Positions 5,537 to 20,130 of a DNA stretch of 33,584 bases are shown here, one piece after another. The translations under genes were made by a program, and so were the position numbers. The stretch lies in the NCBI RefSeq assembly GCF_016432865.1, contig NC_067398.1, positions 654,782,001 to 654,815,584 of the forward strand, read 5' to 3'. Within the stretch, counting starts at the first letter, position 1. The number at the start of each line of letters is the position of its first letter. The DNA is from Antechinus flavipes. Lineage: Eukaryota. The notes under the pieces were generated by a model, which made no database searches, was not told the DNA's origin, and worked only from the letters and a program-made list of their open reading frames with translations.

Positions 5537-5951
5537 CATAGTTTTCCATCTGATCTAACACTTTCACGCCACACTCCTGCTGACGGGGGTAATGGTTGAA
5601 GATTTGCTGCAGTACGTTTCGAGGCACAAAGACCTCCTTGGGGAAGATGTCCAGCAGGAGGTTATAGATAGCCAGGTCACGCTCCACCCCGTACTCTGGC
5701 ATCTTTCGCAGAGCCAAGTAGATGAAGTCAACATGGCCCCGCTTTCGTACATCCCGTTGGGCAAAGGCCTTGACTGCTCTTGAAAACCCTGTTTTATCTC
5801 GCTGTCCGCCAGTAGCTTGCTCAAAGAAGTCCTCATATGGCTCCAAGGCTTTTGTAGACACTGCAGGGGGCCTCACCATAGGGACTGGCTCAGAATCTGA
5901 GGTTAGTCTCCTTGCATTGTTGTGGAAGCCCATTTGGGGCTGGGAGAAGCC
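5537..5951 (-). CDS. ECSIT: ECSIT coding exon 2 of 7
   Basis: cccacag|GFSQPQMGFH...RKRGHVDFIYLALRKMPEYGVERDLAIYNLLLDIFPKE...YPRQQECGVKVLDQMENY G|gtaaga; 415 nt. Confidence 0.97.
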
Positions 5952-7440: not shown

Positions 7441-7557
7441 CTGTAAAAGGCAGTTTCCTTCAGGCTGCCAAGGGCTGTGCCTTGGAGCAACTCTGGAAAG
7501 GAAGTGGTGTCCCACAGAGTGATCCCAGGTTAGTATGGTCCTCCGTATGCAGTTCAT
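7441..7557 (-). CDS. ECSIT: ECSIT first coding exon (putative mitochondrial presequence); exon probably starts at 7570
   Basis: gatcag|ggccagcagcaagATG, MNCIRRTILTWDHSVGHHFLSRVAPRHSPWQPEGNCLLQ|gtagca. 39 codons, phase 0 matches the next exon, A at -3. Supported by splice logic rather than sequence similarity. Confidence 0.8.
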
Positions 7558-8415: not shown

Positions 8416-8499
8416 AGCACTTGCAGACCAACTACCACACCTCTGAGAGCTTCCACCACGCCCCTCCTAGGAGGCAATCCTCCTGTAGCACCTTGCAGC

Positions 8500-9130
8500 T
8501 GGGAACAGCCTCGGCTGTGTGCTAGCTACAGGCACGTGGGTGTCCCCTAGGTCGGGCGGGGTCTCCGGGGCCCGAAGCATGTCTCTTTCTTCCTCGCCCG
8601 GGTACTGGGTTTGGGGCGGAGTCGGGGTGGTGGCGGTGAGTGAAGGGAGCGGAGGTTGAGGGTCACACGTACACATTATAAGCACACTATACATTCACAC
8701 ACAATATATACGAACACACAGGCGGGGTTCGAGTCGCTCCGCCCCTCCCCTTCCCAAACACAATCCAAGGGGAAAAGGTCACGATGTCCGCAGACCTGTG
8801 GCAGAACGCGCTCGGAGGCCGGACACGGACGCAGAGGCCAGAGCCCGGGCTAGTTCCCGAGCGGCGCGACGGTAATTCTTTCCTACCGCAATTCTCAGCT
8901 GTCTCCGGGTCTACTTGTCAGAATTGCTGGGTGCAGCCATATTGGCCATTATAGCTTCCGGGTCATAGGTTGTTGGGCTTTCTCAGAGGATATCTTCAGG
9001 ATGGGGAGCCAAAGGAAAGACGTCATTTAAAGTTCCCACCCACCATAGTTAAGGACACGTCCCCTACCCGCTTCACTCATTCTTAGCTTAGAAGGGGCTC
9101 CTGAAGTGGATCGCCGTTAGGGGCCGAGCT
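8500..9130 (-). promoter_or_regulatory. CpG island / ECSIT promoter and non-coding exon 1
   Basis: CpG-rich. YY1 motif AATATGGC (minus, 8936-8943) next to ETS/GABP CCGGAAG (minus, 8955-8961), typical of nuclear-encoded mitochondrial genes. Candidate exon 1 donor GCG|GTAGGA at 8887/8886 is uncertain. Confidence 0.8.
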
Positions 9131-9483
9131 CTTGCGAGCTGTAATCTTCCTATCTCTGCTGTTTGCACAGGCTCATTAGCCTTTAGTTTGTTCATCTGCG
9201 AAATGGGTAAAAAGTTATTCACCAAACCCAGAGAAAGGAAGGTAGGGCACGAGGAGGCTGCGTAGTGATAAGCGAGCTTCTTTCCCGGGTCATTGCTGCC
9301 AATGGACTGGGACCTATCCAACCCCAGCCCAGCTCTGATGGATCCGGAGAGATAGGGTTTCAGAATTTCGGCCTTACCTTCTTTCATTTTACAGTTGAGG
9401 AAACTGAGTCCACGAGTTGTCAAAATGAGTTGATGTTTCATAGGATTTAGAACCCTAAGTCAGCTTAGATTCTTCACCCTCTT

Positions 9484-10100
9484 CTTTTTTATTGAAGCTT
9501 TTTATTTTCAAAACGTAGGCAAGGATAATTTTTCACCATTGTCCCTTGCAAAACCTTGTGTTCCAATTCCCTCCCTTCCCCCCATCCCCTCCCTTAGATG
9601 ACAAGTAATTCAATATATGTTAAACATGGTAAAAATATATGCAAATCCAATATAGGCATACATATTTATAAAAAGGAAAAAAAATGAGAAAGAAAATACA
9701 ATTCAAGCAAATAACAAAAGCAGTGAAAATGCTAGGTTGTAATCCACACTCAGTTATCAGAGATTTCTCTCTGGGTGTAATGGCTCTCATCTTCATGAAA
9801 TCATTGGAAGTGACCTGAATCCTTCATTGTTGAGAAGAGTCACGTCCATCAGAATTGATCATCATATAATCTTGTGCCATGTACAATGATCTCCTTGTTC
9901 TGCTCATTTCACTCAGCATCAGTTCCTGTAAGTCTCTCCAGGCCTCTCTGAAATCATCCTGCAGGTTGTTTCTTACAGAATAATATTCCACAACATCCAT
10001 ATACCATAACTTATTCAGCCATTCTGCAATTGATGGGCATCCACTCAGTTTCCAGTTTTTTGCCGCTACAAAAAGGGCTGCCACAAATATTTTTGCACAT
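9484..10100 (-). mobile_element. L1 3' fragment (ORF2 C-terminus plus 3' UTR)
   Basis: ORF 9824-10111 reads CAKIFVAALFVAAKNWKLSGCPSIAEWLNKLWY...AWRDLQELMLSE, the L1 ORF2 C-terminal region; poly-T tail near 9484. Confidence 0.9.
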
Positions 10101-12555
10101 CCCACCCTCATTTTTTAGAGATGGGAAATACTAACAGCAGAAGTTGATATATGATTGCAAAAGAGTTTCTATACAAACCATTTTTTCATCCAAACAACAA
10201 CTGTAAGAGTGAGTATTTCCATTTTTCAGTTATCCTTTCCATTTCCACAATTTCTTTTATATATGTTCTCTCCTACCACCTTAGTTGAAGTGGCCATTCA
10301 GCTTCTGCATGAAGACTGCCAGGGAGAAGAAAAACACCACCTCTGTGGTACCCATCACTCTTTTATATAATTTAAAGCATTAGAAAGTTTTTCCTGACAC
10401 AATGCAAATTATCTTCTTTGTAAGTTGCTTCTGGAGACAAGCCAAACTAGCCCAATCCCTCCTCCACATCAATATTTTAACTACTACTTAAAACACAGAG
10501 GCAGTGAAGAGTCATGGGGGAGGGAGGTACTGTCTTCAACAATCATATGGAAGTTGAGTAGGAGAGATCCTTAGAAGAAAGATGATTTATTTGACATTTT
10601 GACCCCCAAACAATGAATTATTCACTAAATGGAGTACCCTAGATGCAAAGGAATTTTCTTAAACTTTATGAAAATGTGTATGGACAAGCCCTTTATCGTT
10701 TTGAAAGGATCATGGGACTTTGGCCATTTGATGAAAGGCAAATGAGGCCACATGGGAAATAGATTATGCTTGCATGAAATGATCAAAAGTGCCTCTGGCC
10801 CTGTGTATAAAACAGTAAGTCACTTCTGAGTTTCACAGACTGATTGCAGGTCAATGAGGGGGTAGAAAAGCTCTTGAGAAATAGAACAAAGTAGAAAAGA
10901 ATAAAATAATAAATGGAAAAGATTCATTCTCTTTTTCCCACCTCCAGGACACCAGAATTAGGAAGATCCTGAAGTCCCATCAAAAATTTCACCAGTTATT
11001 AGAGTTGGTAACAGAGTCCAATAGAGCTAGATACATGATAAGTATAGGAGTCACAAGATGACGTGGTAGTAATATGGGAATCAAGATGATGTGGTATTAG
11101 TCTTGAGGTGGAGATATCCAGGTAAAGATGTTGTAAACATTAAATATTCTTGAATATCTATAAACTAAAAGCTTGTGTTTTCCCTTCCCTTGGCACCTGA
11201 GCAGCATTGGAGGAGACAGAACCAGCAATAATGAAGAGACCAGACCCAGCAGAGGAGTTCCTGGCACAATGAGATTACTGAGAACACTAAAAAAAAAAGG
11301 GATTAGAGAGTTCCTAGAAAATCCTGGGAATTTAGGATTAGGAGAAACTGGGATCTGGGCCATGGGAGCTCAAAATGGAGCTCTTGAAGAACAGAGGATT
11401 CAGCCTGGCTCAGTAGCAACTGGCAGATTCTTACCCAACAGCAAATTGGCCCTACCTGATAGCATATTAACCTTTCTTTTTTTTTTAATTTTAAATTTTT
11501 ATTTAATAATTACTTTATATTGACACATATTAACCTTTCTAAAAGAGATTGCCCTGCAAAGAGCCAACCACACCGGTAAACTTAACTATCCTACTATAAC
11601 CTGCCCTACTCTGAATTTCATAAGGGATCTCTGAAGAAAGAAAATTAATGACTATGTGCCTCATCATAATGTACTCTTTAAATCTGAGCTGACTCTCCCA
11701 AAGGCCTTGTATAATGCAAAGGAAGGGTGTTCCATTTGAGGAGAAAGATTTTTACCAACTGTTTTTACTATGTTTTTTTTTTTTTTAATAAATACCCTTG
11801 CTAAAATGTTATTGAGAATACTGGCTAATCATAAATGTGAAGTATACTAGGGAGAGCTCAGAATCAACTGTGTTAGAAACGCTAGGATTTCTAATTTGCC
11901 CACAATCTTGTGAAGAATAGTCTGAGGGACCAGACTTTTCAGTTCAAGTGGGAGTCAGAGAAGTAGTCCCACAGGGAGTGTTACATTCTAGAAATTACTA
12001 ATAGAGACTTAGCCATCACTTCTGACAGTTCTTTCAGGACCCAAGCATGTGGTTTATCAGGCCATCAGATTGAACTAGGAACTTTCATTATCTCCTTGCT
12101 TATTAGCTCCTTTCTAGCTACTGCATCTCCTACAAAAGTTATTCTTCTGGCAGAGAAAATAGGAACACAATAATTAACTTTACAAACAGGTTCCTCTCAA
12201 CCTTACTTCTCCCTACTTACTCCTTGAGATCATACAGGCTGCCTCCTGTGTGTCCCTCCTATATAATCTCTCTTTCCCATATCCATGTCTTTGTACTGGC
12301 TATTAACTCATGCCCGGAATGGTCTCCCTCTTCACCACTGTCTTGGAATCCCTAGTTAAAATTCAGCCATTATCTACATAAAGCCTTTCCTGATGTTCCC
12401 AATTCTTAGTGCTTTCCTTCCCCCAAATACCTTGCTCCTGTCCCTTCTCCCTCATCCCACAACCTCTGATTAGGTATTGAGGATGGGACTCCTAGCCTCT
12501 GAGAGCCCCAAATCCTTTCAGCCTCCCGGATGCAAAGCTCAGTTTCTCTAAGTTC

Positions 12556-12744
12556 CAGGGGGCCTCAAACTTTTTAAATAGGGGGCCAGTTCACTATCCC
12601 TCAGACTGTTGGAGGGCAGGACTATAGTAAAAACAAAAACTTTGTTTTGTGGGCCTTTAAATAAATTTCATAGCCCTGGGGTGAGGGGGATAAACGTCCT
12701 CAGCTGCTGCATCTAGCTCACAGGCCGTAGTTTGAGGACCCCTG
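12556..12744. mobile_element. hAT MITE, OposCharlie1 (OC1)-like non-autonomous element, 189 bp
   Basis: TIRs CAGGGGGCCTCAAACT (12556-12571) and AGTTTGAGGACCCCTG (12729-12744), 15/16 complementary. Family assignment is from memory of the OC1 termini. No 8-bp TSD seen. Confidence 0.8.
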
Positions 12745-12827
12745 CACCGTCCTATGCCCCAGGCTAAGGGACCTGGAGGGCCAGGGAGCTGGCAATGACT
12801 GCCACAGTCACCTCTTGGACTCCTGAG

Positions 12828-12833
12828 TTTATT
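12828..12833 (-). terminator. Candidate poly(A) signal AATAAA of the unannotated gene
   Basis: Plus-strand TTTATT at 12828-12833, 80 nt past the predicted stop. Confidence 0.55.
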
Positions 12834-12912
12834 CCAGTCAGTCTACTCCTCAAGAAGGGTAGCCATGGGTACCAGGCAGGGAGCCAGGATTCCTGAGAGC
12901 GAGACGCCAAGG

Positions 12913-13101
12913 TCAGCGCTGGGAGCTCCCTGGGAAGCCAAGGGTATCCCTGCTCCAGATGGGGAGAGGCGTGTCCTCCGACTCGGATTGGCTGGTACAG
13001 CTGCAGGGGCGGGGCTCCTGTGCAGTGACTTTGGGACCAGCATGATGCTCCTGCAGTCGCAGCTTTTGAGTCCTGATGTGCTGAGCGACCCTTCCAGTCC
13101 A
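12913..13101 (-). CDS. Candidate unannotated gene, terminal coding exon WTGRVAQHIRTQKLRLQEHH...FPGSSQR*
   Basis: ataag|TGG, 62 codons to TGA at 12915-12913. GC-rich and not recognisably repeat-derived. The acceptor choice is ambiguous (see findings). Confidence 0.5.
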   Translation of the reverse strand, partial: WTGRVAQHIRTQKLRLQEHHAGPKVTAQEPRPCSCTSQSESEDTPLPIWSRDTLGFPGSSQR

Positions 13102-13174
13102 CTTATCCAGCAGTAGGGAGCTGCCTGTCCCCAGGATCTATCCCCTCACCCCAACTCCCACCCCCACTACTTAC

Positions 13175-13253
13175 TTCATCTGTCTTCTCAATCTGAAGCC
13201 TGTCAACTCGGGTAATCCTGCAATTGACACACCTGAACTTGTTCCACAGGTAC
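13175..13253 (-). CDS. Candidate unannotated gene, exon YLWNKFRCVNCRITRVDRLQIEKTDE
   Basis: ccctgtag|G TAC ... GAT GAA|gtaagt (consensus intronic donor); 79 nt, phase 2 to 0; contains CxxC. Confidence 0.6.
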
Positions 13254-13534
13254 CTACAGGGTGCTTCAAGCACAGTCTTCCTACCACCAGTCTCCATTTC
13301 GCCGAATCAGGGACTCAGAACCTCAGTATTTTCCAAGAGACCTCCATCCTGAGCTCCCAGGGCTACCAATCCAGCTTCTCCTAATCCTAAATCTCCAGGA
13401 TTTCCCAGGAACTCTAAATCCCCTGTTTTAGGAATTCCCATTAATTTAAGTGTCCCCAAAACTCTCTAGCCCACCTCCAATCTCAGACTCTCCTGTCCTG
13501 ACATCTTAGCCTCCGCCACTCTACCAAGAACTCG

Positions 13535-13895
13535 GATTCAAAATGATGACAGCCAATTCTAGTAGACTTGTGATGGAAAGTGCCATCCGTGTCCAGAGAG
13601 AAAACTATGAACACTGAATGTGGATCAAAACATACCTTTTCACCTTTTTTGCTGTTTTTTTCTTTTGATCTGATTTTGTGTGTGTATGTTTGTATATGCA
13701 ACACAATGAATGTAGACATATGTTTAGAAGAATTGTACATGTTTAACTTATATCTGATTGCTTGCCATCTTGGGGAGGGGGAAAGGGAGAATAGAGGAAG
13801 AAAAATTTGGAACACAATGCTTTGAAAATGTGAATATTGAGAGCTATCTGCATGTATTTGGAAAAATAAAATACCATAAAAAAACAAAACAAAAG
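13535..13895 (+). mobile_element. L1 3' UTR fragment (in an intron of the candidate gene, antisense to it)
   Basis: Shares marsupial L1 3' UTR text with the copies at 6400-6760 and 23230-23620; A-rich tail. Confidence 0.8.
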
Positions 13896-13999
13896 TAAAA
13901 TGAAGGCTTCTTCTGCTGTTTTCCTTCCCTCTTCTGCCTGGGATCCCTTTTGATCTTTCCTGAAATCAGCTGTACCTCAGCTATTGTGAACGGGTGGAC

Positions 14000-14074
14000 C
14001 TGGATCCTGGTTCTTCCCCTAAATGATCAGGGTTGAGGTCATATTTCTGGAAAATGTTATAGGCTGCTTGCAAT
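14000..14074 (-). CDS. Candidate unannotated gene, exon LQAAYNIFQKYDLNPDHLGEEPGS(R)
   Basis: ccttttttag|A TTG ... TCC AG|gtccac; 75 nt, phase 2 to 2; the donor is weak. Confidence 0.55.
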
Positions 14075-14201
14075 CTAAAAAAGGATCTCCTTCTTCACTT
14101 CCCCCCACTGTTAATTAAGGGAGAACTAATAACTAGGACAGAGAAGAGAAGTGCTTGAACCTACGTCAGAGGTGAATGATCAGGACTAGGACTGCCTTCA
14201 C

Positions 14202-14301
14202 CTTAGAGCTGGCAGATCTGCAATCCTAGTAATCTTGTCCCCATTACTTTCTTCAAAGTCTCTAGGCCTGGACCGCCCCACAGGGATGTAGTCTTGCCTA
14301 T
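14202..14301 (-). CDS. Candidate unannotated gene, exon (D)RQDYIPVGRSRPRDFEESNGDKITRIADLPAL(R)
   Basis: ctccccactccttccctag|AT ... CTA AG|gtgaag; 100 nt, phase 1 to 2, good pyrimidine tract. Confidence 0.6.
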
Positions 14302-14367
14302 CTAGGGAAGGAGTGGGGAGCCCTTTCACTGGTTAACATTTACTGGGAGTAAAGAAAGGCTAGCTAC

Positions 14368-14430
14368 CCTCCTTGATTCTTCTGTGGATTTTAATCTGTC
14401 CCAGATTTATCCTCTGCTTTGCCCAGGCCA
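14368..14430 (-). CDS. Candidate unannotated gene, exon (V)AWAKQRINLGQIKIHRRIKE
   Basis: cttctatgtctcag|TG ... GAG G|gtagct; 63 nt, phase 1 to 1, no stops. Confidence 0.5.
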
Positions 14431-14444
14431 CTGAGACATAGAAG

Positions 14445-14770
14445 GTGTCTATGTGTCTGTATGTGCACTGTTATGAGAGTGGATTGTGTGTGCTAATATA
14501 TCTTTTAGAGGGAAAGTAGGTTTGTGTATTTTTGAGTATGAATCAGCAACCACATCCCTCTGTGTGTATGGCAATATCCGATGTGACTATGTAATGATAG
14601 ATGTAGGGAATATATATGTCTTTTAGTACCCTCCTATCTGTGTCTATAAATATGTGTATCAATAACTAAGTCTAAGTGTCTGTGCCTGTATATGTCACAA
14701 AGATAAATCTGATGCTGAACATCTATGTGTCTATATATCTAGTCTGCATTTCAGTGAGTCCATTTGTGCC
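14445..14770. repeat. TG/TA-rich low-complexity tract (CA-rich on the minus strand)
   Basis: Repeated tgtg/tatg motifs. Confidence 0.7.
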
Positions 14771-15271
14771 TGAGTGAATGTCTGCCTAAGCTGGTCCCAG
14801 AGTGTCCCACAGAGTGTCAATTCTCTGTTCTCTCTCTCTCCTTTGGTCTATCTTCCTATCTCTGGACAAATATACTGTACTTTCCCCTCCTCCTAGCCAT
14901 CACCCAGGAAGGGAGCCAGAACTTCTGGGTTCTAACATCTCCTAATTCTGGTTTCTGGGGCTCCATAGGTGGAGGTCAGAGCACAGCCTCAGGCAAGTTG
15001 GGAAGGGCTGATTTATTCCTTGATTCAGATACATGACACATGTGGGAGGAGGCCTTCTGAGAGAAGTGATGTTGTCCCTGTCCTTGCCCAGGCCCTGCCA
15101 TGGTGAAATCCCAGAGGTGGGATTTTCTCTACTTTAGTGGTTTGAGAGGTTCTGTCATGGCCTTCCTTCTCTGTTCTGCTTTCAGTTCTCATGTATCCTG
15201 CTACTTCAGCACTATCCACCATAATTTGGACCCCTCCCCCAAGCAAAAGGAGTGATTCAACCTTGTCCAAC

Positions 15272-15347
15272 CTCTCTTAAATTCCAAATCAGGGCCCTCA
15301 TGGAGTCTTTCCTGGGAATCCCCAGGCTGAGATCTGCTATTTTCCAT
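15272..15347 (-). CDS. Candidate unannotated gene, putative first coding exon (MENSRSQPGDSQERLHEGPDLEFKR)
   Basis: ggacag|T ATG G; ends AGA G|gttgga (phase 1, weak donor). Least certain exon of the model. Confidence 0.4.
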
Positions 15348-16554
15348 ACTGTCCACAGTGACAATTTTGGAGAATTGGTTAGGGGAGTGAAGGCAGAACC
15401 CATGGGTAAGAGAAATTTGGGGATGAATAAAATCACAGGCTTTAGAGCTAGAAGAAACCTTAGAGATCGTCTGATTATTAGTTTTAATGACCAATCTATG
15501 TAAAACACACTCACTCATAAAAATCATTAATCACTCATTCATTGACCTCCCAGCACCTTCCAACATTTCTGCCTGATGGAATTTTGGGTTCTTACTAGGA
15601 ATCTGCCTAGTCATCTAAATCCTAACCCCTTTTAAACAAAGGGACAAAAGGAGACTCAGATAAGAGGGATGGTTTTCCAGAGATCATCCAAATCTTGGTG
15701 GAATCTTACTTACAAAAGAGAATGTTGTTTTGTCCTATTCTGTCCGACTCTTCCTGACCCCATTTGCAGATTTGAACCCATGGCCTCTGACTCAAAATCC
15801 ATCACTTCTTCTAGGAATGCCTTTGAGTGGGGTATTTAAGTCCCAGTATCCAGTAATTTTTCTGTCACAATAGAAAGTCTGTCTTCAGACATCTCTGTCT
15901 TCAGAAAGTCCATAGTCTGGTTCATAGAGATAAGACATGGAACCCCAAACTTACAAAACAAGGCCAAGTGTAAGGGTCAAAATTCTACAGTGAGATCACG
16001 TAGCTGGAGTCATCCTTCGTAGAAGGCTTCATTCAGGAGATGTATTGGTTAGGAGGGGCCCTTGGAGCATGAATCAAACAGGTTTTGGCAAATAGAAACA
16101 AGGGATTCCAGGCAGAGAGGAGTGTGAAGGCAGGCCTGGAGCTGATTTGGTGCCATGTCGAGCTTAGAAGACTTGGGGAAGACAGAGTAGATGGTGAAAA
16201 ATGTGAAAACAAAGCATCCCCAATGCTGAGACTCTGTGTGTTTCCTTCTACCTCCTGACCTCAGATTCTTTCCCACCAGTATCTCCTGATCCTTCAGCCT
16301 TAGCCCTGACCCCAATAAAGTTGGGGAGCTATCCCTTGGATTCTTCCTCTCTCTTCCACCATCTCTCTTGATCTGTTCTCATCACTCTGTCCTTCTGGGG
16401 ACTTAGGCCAGCAAGTAGTCAATCAATCAGCAAATTTCATTTATTAAGAGTGCCAGGCACAATGCTCAGTATTGATGTATAATATAGAAAGAGTGGAAAA
16501 GTAGGAAGGGGCCAGACTGTAAAAAGCTTTTAAATATCATAGCCAGAATTTATA

Positions 16555-16765
16555 AGGGCAGCTAGAGGGTACAGTGGATAGAATACTGGGCTTACAATCA
16601 GGAAGATTTTCATGAGTTCAAATCTGTCCTCAAATGAGGGCAAGCCTCTGTTTTCTCATCTGAAAAATGAACTGGAGAAGGAAATGACAAATTATTCCAG
16701 TATGTCTTTGGAGAAAGCCCCATCTGGAGTCATGAAGAGTCAAAACAACTAAATAACAACAAAGC
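16555..16765 (+). mobile_element. CORE-SINE (Mar1/MIR-like)
   Basis: tRNA-like head, core (ttttctcatctgaaaaatga) and tail (ggagaaggaaatgacaa...). Confidence 0.75.
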
Positions 16766-18169
16766 ATTCCTATACATAGCCCTTTAAGATTTGCCAAGTT
16801 CTTTACAAATATTATCTCTTTTGATCCGCATAAGAACCCTGGGAGGTGGTTGCTATTATCACCCTCTCTGTTTTATAGATGAGGATATTGAGCCTGAGTT
16901 TAAATGATTTTTCTAAAGTCACAGAGCTAATCTGAGAGCAGACTTGGATTCTAGTGAGCTCTATAGTTGTTGCTGCTCTAAATGATAGTTTTTATTAGAT
17001 ACTTCCATAGTTGGGAATGGAGAGAAGCATGCCATAGTCAAACATACACTTTAGACAAACCACCCCAAACAGTTTCTCCCTTACTAATGATCTTTCCCAC
17101 CCATCCTCATCTCCCTCCAGAATACAAGGTTTTCTGCACTTTGCCAACTTCTGTCAGGTCTGAGTTCACATATTTCTTCAGTAATTCATAATAATTATAT
17201 GCATTTATATATTTATTTAAGGCTTGCAAATGGCTTCTCTCTCTCTTGATCTTCACAACAATCTTATCCTTATTTACAGAGGGAGAAATTGAGGTTCAGC
17301 ATGATGCAAAATTTTCCATCACAGGTATCAAATCCAGGCCTCTCCTAACTTCAAGTGCAGCCCATTTATTTTTTAGACCAGAACTGTGATTTCATCAGCA
17401 TAGGAAACTTCCTATATGGAAACTCTCCAATGAAATAACTGATCCTACTCTTCAGCTTAGAAAGATACCTGGGACAGCTCCAAAAGATTTATGATGTCAC
17501 TTGCTCTCAAGTTTCAAATAAAGACTTGGTAGTCACAAAGTATCTATTGAACGATATCCTTTTTCCCTTTCTCCCTTGCTTTTTGGGGAGGAAGGAGTCA
17601 TGGCAAGTGCAGAAATATGTTTTTCATGACTTTACATGTATGATGGATATCATATTTCTTGATTTCTCAAGGATAGGAGATGGGAACAAAAAAATTAAAA
17701 TTAAAATTAAGAAGGAAACCTGTGGCACTGAAAAGTTTAAATATCTTGTTAAGAGTCAGTCTGCCACTATCAGTCTTAGGCAGGAATTGAACATAGGTCT
17801 TGATCACTCTTATGTTGTTAGCCCTGTCCTCTCCTCCAAACTTTTCCTTACTTAAACCCATTGGGTAGGAGTAGAGTGGGGCTAGGAGAAAAGGGGAGGG
17901 CAAAAGAATTCCCTAATATTAAATCCCTTTCCCCTTCACATTTAAGATAGGGAGAAAATTAGTTCCAGATCTAACTCCTACACTTATCACAGATGAGACC
18001 ACGACTTTGTCAGTTAATCTTTCTGAGACAATCTATTGTCCCGTTTTGAAAAAGATAGCAATACTTTACCCTTGTAAAACATAGGATCAGAGGATCATTA
18101 CAGGCCATAGAAATGCAAATCGCCCTTTCCCTTACTATAAAGACTCCAATGTGTGTTTCCTTCACACTA

Positions 18170-18225
18170 ACCTCTCTCTGTCTCTGTCCATCTCTCTGTC
18201 TCTCTCTCTCTCACACACACACATA

Positions 18226-18265
<40 letters not shown>

Positions 18266-18278
18266 CACACACACACAC
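18170..18278. repeat. Compound (TC)n-(CA)n microsatellite
   Basis: Directly visible. Confidence 0.95.
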
Positions 18279-18364
18279 TCCTTCTGCCCTCATTTTGTCC
18301 CTTTTCCCGGGTGGTTCTTAGACAAAACAGGCTTGCCCACCTTTTTTTTATATATACATTTGAT

Positions 18365-18718
18365 CTATTTAAAAAATTTTAATAATAGCTTTTTATTTTC
18401 AAAATACACGTGAAGCTAGTTTTCAACATTCATCCTTGAAAAACCTTGTTTCAAATTTTTCTCCCTCTTTTCCCTCCTCTCCCTCCCCTGGACAGCAAGT
18501 AATCCAATATAGGCTAAACATTTTCAATTCTTCTAAACATTTCCATATTTATCATGCTGCACAAGAAAAATCAAATCAAAAGGGAAAACTGTGAGGAAAA
18601 AAAGCAAGCAAACATCAACAAAAAAGGTGAAAATACTATGTTGTGATCCACATTTAATCCCCATAATCCTCTTTCTGGCTGAAGATGGCTCTCTCCATCA
18701 CAAGTCTATTGGAATTTG
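18365..18718 (-). mobile_element. L1 3' UTR fragment
   Basis: Reverse complement of the same 3' UTR family (ttattttcaaaatac..., ccatcacaagtctattggaatt). Confidence 0.8.
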
Positions 18719-19099
18719 GCCCAGCTTTTCAAAGACTGTCATCTCAAATGACTTAGCCCTGGTGTTGGTCTTCTTGCTTTCTCCCATCTTGCTTGGCTCC
18801 CATCTACTATAGCTTGATGCTTGGGTGGGCTGGCACCAAATCCCTAGTCAAATGGTGGATTTGTCATGCCTGGGTCCTTAACTCCGTGAGCCTCAGCATC
18901 TTCAGAGTTCTATGGTTGTAAGGCATCTAGAGTGGCCTGCCAGGTTTCATTCAAAAAGAGTCCCAAGAGCAGGACTAGATAAGAAGAAAGAAATTGGGGA
19001 GCAATTGAGGAGGTGGGCGACCTTCCTCAGAGGGACCCTCCCCCTCATTTGGGGAATCCCTGCCTGGCTGTGAACTAATGCCTATGGATTGTTTCTCTT

Positions 19100-19300
19100 T
19101 CGTTCTGGAAGAGGACCATGACATCAGGGAGGTGATGCTGTGACAAGCACGTGAATTGGATTTGGGGGAGGGCGACTGTGCAAGGTCCCCTGCCTCACTT
19201 TCCCTTCCAGAGCCATCTGGGTCCCTTGGCAAGATATAGGCAGGATGACTGGGGACGGCTCTGGATGCAACGGGACACCGATTAAACTGAACTCGATAAG
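19100..19300 (+). mobile_element. Marsupial interspersed repeat (WALLSI-like), copy 1
   Basis: ggaccatgacatcagggaggtgatg...gaattggattt...gtgcaaggtc...caggatgact, shared with 19875-20130 and 21680-21885. Family name tentative. Confidence 0.65.
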
Positions 19301-19359
19301 CCAAGGACTATACGGCCGCTTATTAGAGATTCTCCTCTCTTCCCCTTCTCCTCCCTCAC

Positions 19360-19700
19360 CTCCCCCTTCAAGGCTTCCCAGACAGGACAGTTAGGAGAGG
19401 GGCGATCCGAAGTCCAGAGCATCCCTAGAGGGCGCCGGCGCCACGTGCCCGCAAACGCTCAAACACCTTGGAGAACGAGGCGGCCCACAAGTTATGAATG
19501 GTGTTTGGGATGGGGGCTCCCACGATTGGTCAAGTCCCGAGTTCTTGTAGCCAATCAAGTGCCAGTTCAAGAGGGGCTCGCCTTCCTTTTGCGGATCTCC
19601 GCGGTTTCTCGGACCTGGTGCGGTCTCCTGCGTGACCCCGAACTGCCTTCTCCTGGCCACGTTTCCGAGGCGCTCATAGGTCTGTGACGGGTCCTGGAGC
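19360..19700 (-). promoter_or_regulatory. Orphan CpG-rich promoter-like island with candidate first exon
   Basis: CpG cluster; E-box CACGTG 19442-19447; ATTGG 19525-19529 and CCAAT 19551-19555; strong donor GAG|GTGAGG at 19360/19359 on the minus strand. Confidence 0.6.
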
Positions 19701-19874
19701 CTTGGCTAAAGACTCCAAAGATGCAGCACATCCATCCACAGCATACATGACACGTTTGGCTGAGCGTCCCTTATTAAGCGCTTACTGTTTGCTGCAGGCA
19801 CCTTGCTAGGTTCCCGGACTGCAGAAGGGGAAAGGACACCGTCCTTGTTTCCAAGAAACTTACAATTAGATATT

Positions 19875-20130
19875 GTTCTTTGTCTTTCCTTCTGCAGATA
19901 GGGAGGGGACGCCGTGACCTGCAAGTGAGTTGGAGTTCAGTGAGGGAGGGCTGGGCAAGGTCCTCCTGAGCCAGATACAGAATCAGGATGGAGATGACCC
20001 TGGATGCAGCGCAAGACCTTTTCAAGCTGAAGTCTTCAATGGGGCTCAGTTTGACTCAGACAACACCCATTCAGTGATTAAGACTAGGTAGTAATTGAGG
20101 CAAATTGTTTCCTTTCACCTGGTCCAAAAA
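19875..20130 (+). mobile_element. Marsupial interspersed repeat (WALLSI-like), copy 2
   Basis: gtgagttggagttcagtgagggagggctgggcaaggtc...ggatgcagcgcaagacctt; homologous to copies 1 and 3. Confidence 0.65.

What the first reader, a model, noticed from the sequence alone, without database searches (positions are those of the whole stretch)
19360..19700. Third, orphan CpG-island promoter in the intergenic region
A CpG-dense patch about 10 kb from the ECSIT promoter and about 11.5 kb from CNN1 exon 1. It has CACGTG (19442-19447), two oppositely oriented CCAAT boxes (19525-19529, 19551-19555) and a GAG|GTGAGG donor at 19360 pointing toward the candidate gene. Retained CpG implies germline hypomethylation (inference). 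It is evidence for a transcription unit here, independent of the exon model.
Basis: partly seen in the sequence, partly recalled or inferred. Interest (0 to 1): 0.7.

Follow-up and report, generated by a model that had tools for sequence, protein, structure and literature searches.

The report
Small CpG island with promoter-type motifs
A 500-base CpG-rich island sits alone between the marsupial genes ECSIT and CNN1 and is built like an ordinary promoter, but I could not show that any RNA starts there, so it stays a plausible, unproven member of a well-known class.

Summary
Window 19360-19700 has GC 0.61 and 24 CpG, observed/expected 0.76. The other 20 kb of the ECSIT-CNN1 interval has 0.12 (Poisson P about 5e-12). 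A 500-base stretch, 19268-19767, also meets the strict Takai-Jones island criteria. Every motif is at the stated coordinate.

Two things strengthen the finding. Only three full NF-Y sites (RRCCAATSR) occur in the 33.6-kb window, and two sit back to back 26 bases apart at the island's centre. The minus-strand donor GAG|GTGAGG at 19359/19360 is among the eight strongest donor matches in the window.

The patch is not a tRNA, an Rfam RNA, a coding exon or a repeat with copies in the DNA I could reach. It lies between old SINE copies.

Promoter activity itself is untested. The related-marsupial locus I fetched ends about 1.1 kb short of the patch.

My reading: an unmethylated, NF-Y-type CpG-island promoter firing mainly on the minus strand (about 0.45). 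Its product would be a non-coding RNA or an alternative ECSIT 5' exon.

If real, it is one more orphan CpG-island promoter. First-reader notes record similar readings elsewhere in this genome.

The parts
19268..19767 (.). CpG island by strict criteria (500 bases, GC 0.572, o/e 0.76, 31 CpG)
   Evidence: profile
19360..19700 (.).
19523..19531 (-). NF-Y-type CCAAT box with full flanks, GACCAATCG
19549..19557 (+). NF-Y-type CCAAT box with full flanks, AGCCAATCA. It lies back to back with the first, 26 bases centre to centre
19442..19447 (.). E-box CACGTG
19422..19436 (+). CTCF-like match TCCCTAGAGGGCGCC (13 of 15 to CCASYAGRKGGCRSY). Not above chance in the window
   Evidence: 7 matches against 3.45 expected
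19354..19362 (-). Splice-donor match GAG|GTGAGG. The putative first exon would end at 19360
   Evidence: rough score 10.2; 8 sites this strong in the window
19360..19422 (-). ATG at 19422 followed by 21 open codons ending exactly at the donor (phase 0). Probably non-coding or a short upstream ORF
19089..19255 (+). Old SINE copy A bounding the patch on the left (71% identical to the copy at 21682-21838)
19873..20145 (+). SINE copy B with a poly(A) tail, bounding the patch on the right. It carries the plus-strand donor match CAA|GTGAGT at 19925

Best explanation
The stretch at about 19268-19767 is a short CpG island that has escaped CpG decay. Most likely this is because it stays unmethylated in the germ line (inferred from sequence).

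Its centre carries two back-to-back NF-Y boxes, with an E-box about 80-110 bases away on the minus-strand downstream side. I read it as a TATA-less, NF-Y-type CpG-island promoter (inferred).

Transcription would start mainly on the minus strand at around 19430-19480. It would give a first exon of about 70-120 nt ending at the donor at 19360, which is then spliced towards lower coordinates (inferred).

The product is more likely non-coding than a new protein gene. It could be a separate long non-coding RNA, or an alternative distal 5' exon of ECSIT, which lies downstream on the same strand.
For: - CpG density is six times the surrounding interval and equal to the ECSIT island. Strict island criteria are met.
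- TpG+CpA is not in excess inside the patch (0.98) but is in the flanks (1.12-1.14).
- Two of the window's three RRCCAATSR sites sit 26 bases apart at the island's centre, P about 0.0016.
- A strong minus-strand donor lies 60-170 nt beyond the E-box and NF-Y module, P about 0.024.
- Plus-strand GC skew is negative over 19300-19450, so the minus strand is G-rich, as is usual just downstream of CpG-island start sites. There is no matching skew on the plus side.
- The patch is not an RNA gene, not coding, and has no copy in the window or in loci L001 and L002.
- It lies between two copies of one repeat family, confirmed by alignment within the window.
- Base rate: 42% of human orphan islands show start-site evidence, 60% if H3K4me3 is counted (PMC2944787).
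- Weak: one run on record as RNA, of a related species, holds 5% of the sampled words of 18900-20100, and three more runs guessed to be RNA hold 5-6%.
Against:
- The donor 9-mer occurs four times on the minus strand of the window, including in non-exonic DNA.
- The island is small.
- About 40-60% of orphan islands in the cited study showed no promoter mark.
- The run table cannot say which part of the stretch the RNA runs hold, and small DNA libraries can hold it by chance.
Confidence: 0.45

Rival explanations
1. It is an unmethylated CpG island that is not a promoter today. It could be a distal enhancer or insulator between the ECSIT and CNN1 domains, a Polycomb-type silent island, or the relic promoter of a gene that was lost or moved.
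For: A CTCF-like match at 19422-19436. 40-58% of orphan islands lacked start-site evidence in PMC2944787. No coding gene could be tied to it. In the related marsupial locus L001 no protein gene is called in the 10 kb upstream of CNN1. First-reader notes describe relic promoters elsewhere in this genome (untested here).
Against: The CTCF-like match is not above chance (7 against 3.45 expected). A single factor footprint does not explain 500 bases of retained CpG. A paired NF-Y module plus a strong downstream donor is more typical of a start site.
Confidence: 0.27
2. It is not a regulatory element at all. It would be a CpG-rich piece of a repeat or other recent insertion whose CpGs have not yet decayed, or a local product of GC-biased gene conversion.
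For: The patch is flanked on both sides by retroposons, so the neighbourhood accepts insertions. NF-Y boxes also occur in some retroviral LTRs (general knowledge). Copy number could be tested only against 59 kb of DNA.
Against: There is no copy in the window, L001 or L002. There is no poly(A) tail, no LTR-type ends, no target-site duplication, and no ORF or Pfam domain. CpG o/e stays at 0.5-0.6 in the immediately adjoining stretches (19200-19349 and 19700-19849), which fits a protected domain better than a sharp-edged insert. At two sites SINE copy B keeps CG where the other two copies read TG or CA (three copies only).
Confidence: 0.13
3. One reading: it is the promoter and first exon of a new protein-coding gene that includes exon 14202-14301.
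For: The donor points that way. Exon 14202-14301 has good splice sites and one open frame. An ATG at 19422 opens 21 codons to the donor.
Against: Against 1.84 billion representative proteins the exon's open frame found only two hits. P0088 is a tandem-repeat protein in which one weak 22-residue match is counted many times. P0089 is a weaker multi-stretch match to a Por-secretion-tail protein of non-vertebrate type. An annotated marsupial ortholog would have matched strongly. The phase-0 end of the 19360 exon would read exon 14301-14202 in the frame that hits a stop inside it (read). No ORF in 9300-19360 has a domain or looks coding.
Confidence: 0.07

Closest known systems
Orphan CpG islands acting as unannotated or tissue-restricted promoters (Illingworth et al. 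2010, PMC2944787)
   Same: Intergenic and far from the two nearest known start sites. CpG density of about 7 per 100 bases. Promoter-type motif content.
   Different: Those islands were defined by binding of unmethylated CpG and tested with H3K4me3, polymerase, run-on and CAGE data. Here only the sequence is known. 'Orphan' status could not be checked against an annotation.
Distal CpG islands used as alternative promoters of a downstream gene (Sarda et al. 2017, PMC5378174, title and abstract seen)
   Same: It lies about 10.5 kb upstream of ECSIT on ECSIT's strand. It has a donor that faces ECSIT and ends in phase 0, and an ECSIT coding exon with a phase-0 acceptor begins near 5951.
   Different: ECSIT has its own well-formed island promoter at about 8450-9250. 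No spliced read links the two. A phase match has a one-in-three chance.
NF-Y-dependent TATA-less promoters
   Same: Two CCAAT boxes with the full RRCCAATSR context, close together in a CpG island, with no TATA box.
   Different: The defining position of the boxes relative to a start site (general knowledge: about 60-100 bases upstream) cannot be checked without a mapped start site. No binding data.

Membership tests
CpG island (Gardiner-Garden and Frommer) | At least 200 bases, GC at least 0.50, CpG observed/expected at least 0.60 | tested here: met
   19360-19700: 341 bases, GC 0.607, o/e 0.76
CpG island (Takai and Jones, strict) | At least 500 bases, GC at least 0.55, o/e at least 0.65 | tested here: met
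   19268-19767: GC 0.572, o/e 0.76, 31 CpG. 294 overlapping 500-base windows qualify
CpG island (functional definition) | Unmethylated in the germ line | not testable with these tools
   Inferred only from retained CpG and the lack of TpG/CpA excess. No bisulfite data within reach
Orphan CpG-island promoter | Not at an annotated start site | tested here: inconclusive
   It is 10.5 kb from the ECSIT island and 11.6 kb from the CNN1 ATG. No protein gene is called in the 10 kb upstream of CNN1 in L001. No annotation of non-coding genes was available
Orphan CpG-island promoter | Evidence of transcription initiation (capped 5' ends, initiating polymerase, H3K4me3) | not tested
The run table gives only shares of words
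NF-Y-type promoter | CCAAT box in the RRCCAATSR context | tested here: met
   GACCAATCG at 19531-19523 (minus strand) and AGCCAATCA at 19549-19557 (plus strand). Only 3 such sites in the window
NF-Y-type promoter | Box placed about 60-100 bases upstream of the start site | not testable with these tools
   No start site is mapped
Repeat-derived CpG-rich fragment | Several copies in the genome | tested here: inconclusive
   No second copy in the 33.6-kb window or in L001 and L002. This sample is far too small to exclude a low-copy family
Repeat-derived CpG-rich fragment | Structural marks of insertion (poly(A) tail, LTR ends, target-site duplication, transposon ORF) | tested here: not met
   None seen in 19256-19872. 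No Pfam domain in its open frames
Small RNA gene (tRNA, snRNA and the like) | Match to a covariance model or tRNA fold | tested here: not met
   No Rfam match at gathering score. Only a chance-level mir-1249 match outside the patch (E 0.78). No tRNA

The most novel reading that the evidence does not exclude
The island is the promoter and first coding exon of a marsupial transcript with no eutherian counterpart. One form is a lineage-specific small-protein gene between ECSIT and CNN1. The other is an ECSIT isoform whose usual N-terminus is replaced by the 21 residues encoded at 19422-19360, which end in the same phase as the ECSIT exon that begins near 5951.
Probability: 0.07. Interest if true: 0.5.

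Novelty: new member of a known kind. Interest (0 to 1): 0.25.

Why it matters
If it fires, it marks an unannotated transcript or an alternative ECSIT start site in a marsupial genome. It would then be a useful anchor for annotating this interval. It would not change how CpG islands or promoters are understood, because orphan CpG-island promoters are common and well described. Its value is local, for annotation and for comparing marsupial and eutherian regulation of ECSIT and CNN1.

Tried and rejected
There is therefore no read evidence.

2. Using the patch's chance ORFs as handles to fetch other species' or RNA contigs. There were no homologs and no exact entries. A control ORF from L002 was found, so the method works but this locus is not in the collection.

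3. Orthologous DNA through CNN1. An ORF running into CNN1 exon 1 recovered marsupial CNN1 proteins. One diprotodont locus, L001, came with DNA, but it aligns to the window only from 20829 on, about 1.1 kb short of the patch. The Trichosurus and Vombatus places came without DNA. Walking left with ORFs from L001 failed.

4. The candidate exon against 1.84 billion representative proteins gave only repeat-protein artefacts.

5. A metagenome scan for the NF-Y module found nothing, which says nothing either way.

6. The CTCF reading is not above chance.

7. The idea that the patch is the true, only ECSIT promoter. I raised it from my recollection of human and mouse gene spans and set it aside, because the 8450-9250 island has its own CRE-, ETS- and CCAAT-type motifs. 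An alternative distal ECSIT start remains possible.

8. The small libraries X7 and X8 holding 63% and 37% of the words looked like enrichment. Selection among many small runs can produce the same result, so I do not count it.

The joined, spliced models (19360 joined to 14301, or to about 5951) were not built or searched. Only phases were compared.

Full report
**What is there.** I read 18900-20200 directly.
- CACGTG is at 19442-19447.
- ATTGG is at 19525-19529 and CCAAT at 19551-19555.
- On the minus strand GAG|GTGAGG has its last exon base at 19360.
- The stretch 19360-19700 has GC 0.607 and 24 CpG, observed/expected 0.76. The whole window averages 0.25.

**Is the CpG density above chance?** Yes.
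- The rest of the ECSIT-CNN1 interval (9300-19000 and 20150-30600) has o/e 0.11-0.13.
- At that background the patch should hold 3.85 CpG and holds 24, Poisson P 4.6e-12.
- No other 341-base window in the interval has more than 10 CpG.
- The density equals that of the neighbouring ECSIT island (0.71 over 8450-9250).
- The 500 bases 19268-19767 (GC 0.572, o/e 0.76, 31 CpG) meet the strict island criteria.
- Inside the patch TpG+CpA is at expectation (0.98). In the flanks it is in excess (1.12-1.14), the usual mark of CpG decay.

**What it is not.**
- There is no Rfam family at gathering score in the window. Nothing meaningful appears at permissive thresholds over 18900-20150, and there is no tRNA.
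- The two long open frames across the patch have no relatives among 5.8 billion proteins and no Pfam domain.
- The patch has no second copy in the window or in the two other loci I fetched.
- I see no poly(A) tail, LTR-type ends or target duplication.

**Surroundings.** The patch is bracketed by two copies of one retroposon family. Copy A is at 19089-19255. Copy B is at 19873-20145 and has a poly(A) tail. A third copy lies at about 21680-21840. By eye, 19765-19870 is a piece of an old MIR-like SINE. That identification rests on my memory of such sequences and was not tested.

CpG o/e stays at 0.5-0.6 in the stretches that adjoin the core, then falls to 0.1-0.3 further out. At two sites copy B keeps CG where the other two copies read TG or CA. 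This fits a protected domain rather than a sharply bounded young insert, but three copies are few.

**Promoter-type anatomy.** Both CCAAT boxes carry the full NF-Y context, GACCAATCG on the minus strand and AGCCAATCA on the plus strand. Only three such sites exist in the 33.6-kb window, against 5.66 expected from shuffles. Two of them lie back to back, 26 bases apart, in the middle of the island. The chance of two or more in the patch is about 0.0016, computed after the fact.

On a rough donor matrix that I wrote from general knowledge, the minus-strand donor scores 10.2. Eight sites in 67 kb score as high, so the chance of one in a given 200 nt is about 0.024. The same 9-mer occurs four times on that strand, not only at exons.

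Plus-strand GC skew is negative over 19300-19450, which makes the minus strand G-rich downstream of a putative minus-strand start. The plus side shows no such skew. The only strong plus-strand donor (19925) lies inside SINE copy B.

A CTCF-like match at 19422-19436 is not above chance. CACGTG alone is weak evidence.

**Which transcript?** On the minus strand an ATG at 19422 opens 21 codons that end exactly at the donor, in phase 0. That peptide has three acidic residues and does not look like a targeting sequence.

Read from a phase-0 junction, it meets a stop at its end. Its open frame found only two hits among 1.84 billion representative proteins. P0088 is a tandem-repeat protein in which one weak 22-residue match is counted many times over. 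P0089 is a weaker multi-stretch match to a protein with a Por secretion tail, a non-vertebrate type. An annotated marsupial protein containing this exon would have matched strongly, so the coding-gene reading lacks support.

ECSIT lies downstream on the same strand. One of its coding exons begins after a clean acceptor near 5951, also in phase 0. An alternative distal ECSIT 5' exon is therefore possible, though a phase match has a one-in-three chance. ECSIT also has its own island at 8450-9250 with CRE-, ETS- and CCAAT-type motifs. I did not build or search any joined exon model.

**Evidence from elsewhere.** The run search on 18900-20100 found 20 holders. Three closely related organisms hold 63-83% of the words, two further ones hold 13-20%, and four runs (one on record as RNA, three guessed to be RNA) from two related organisms hold 5-6%. 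This hints that part of the stretch is transcribed in relatives. It cannot be localised, and the small libraries that hold much of the stretch may do so by chance.

To reach orthologous DNA I used an open frame that runs into CNN1 exon 1. That gave marsupial CNN1 proteins and one diprotodont locus with DNA, L001. L001 aligns to the window at 72-80% identity, but only from 20829 onwards, about 1.1 kb short of the patch. It shows no protein gene in the 10 kb upstream of CNN1. Two other species came without DNA. L002, a Logan contig of unknown species, shared only short conserved blocks with the window, and I did not pursue it. I met no contig that I took for human.

**Species.** I did not test that.

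**Comparison with what is known.** This is the class described by Illingworth et al. 2010 (PMC2944787). About half of mammalian CpG islands are remote from annotated promoters. In that study 42% of the human ones showed start-site evidence, and 60% did if H3K4me3 is counted. I started from that base rate. I raised it somewhat for the NF-Y pair, the donor and the skew. I held it down for the lack of any direct data.

| Reading | Probability |
|---|---|
| Active promoter, mainly minus strand, non-coding or ECSIT-linked product | 0.45 |
| Non-promoter or relic island | 0.27 |
| Repeat, insertion or conversion product | 0.13 |
| Promoter of a new coding gene | 0.07 |

**Verdict.** The promoter reading is reasonable but unproven. 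The link to the candidate gene is unsupported. If real, it is an ordinary new member of a well-known kind.

Noticed in passing
I did not send these letters to any search tool afterwards.
   Followed up: no
window 8880-9070, minus strand: The ECSIT island carries a compact motif cluster: TGACGTC (CRE-like), CCGGAAG (ETS-like) and ATGGCCAATATGGC (CCAAT with a YY1-like core). A possible donor CACAG|GTCTGC lies near 8795.
   Followed up: partly
window 7441-7557, minus strand: An ATG-led 39-codon open stretch (4 basic and 2 acidic residues) ends at a weak phase-0 donor. It is the only candidate my filter found for an N-terminal ECSIT exon upstream of the exon that begins near 5951. The ECSIT start codon is therefore not settled.
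   Followed up: partly
window 19089-19255, 19873-20145, about 21680-21840: Three copies of one retroposon family, 71-77% alike. The copy nearest the island's right edge keeps CG at two sites where the others read TG or CA.
   Followed up: partly
Trichosurus vulpecula CNN1 place (no DNA): A 105-residue Ribosomal_L36e gene is annotated on the opposite strand and spans the whole 25-kb CNN1 locus and beyond. This is an odd model. No RPL36-like frame is visible in this window.
   Followed up: no
P0088: A 996-residue protein made of units of about 59 residues. It gave E 1.5e-10 to a 32-residue query only because one weak match is repeated many times. This is a caution for short queries against the representative library.
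   Followed up: yes
window 9377, minus strand: A strong donor match, AAG|GTAAGG (rough score 11.3), lies just upstream of the ECSIT island in what I read by eye as repeat-derived sequence. It may be chance, or the end of an upstream exon.
   Followed up: no
window 18212-18278: A (CA)33 microsatellite about 1.1 kb left of the island.
   Followed up: no
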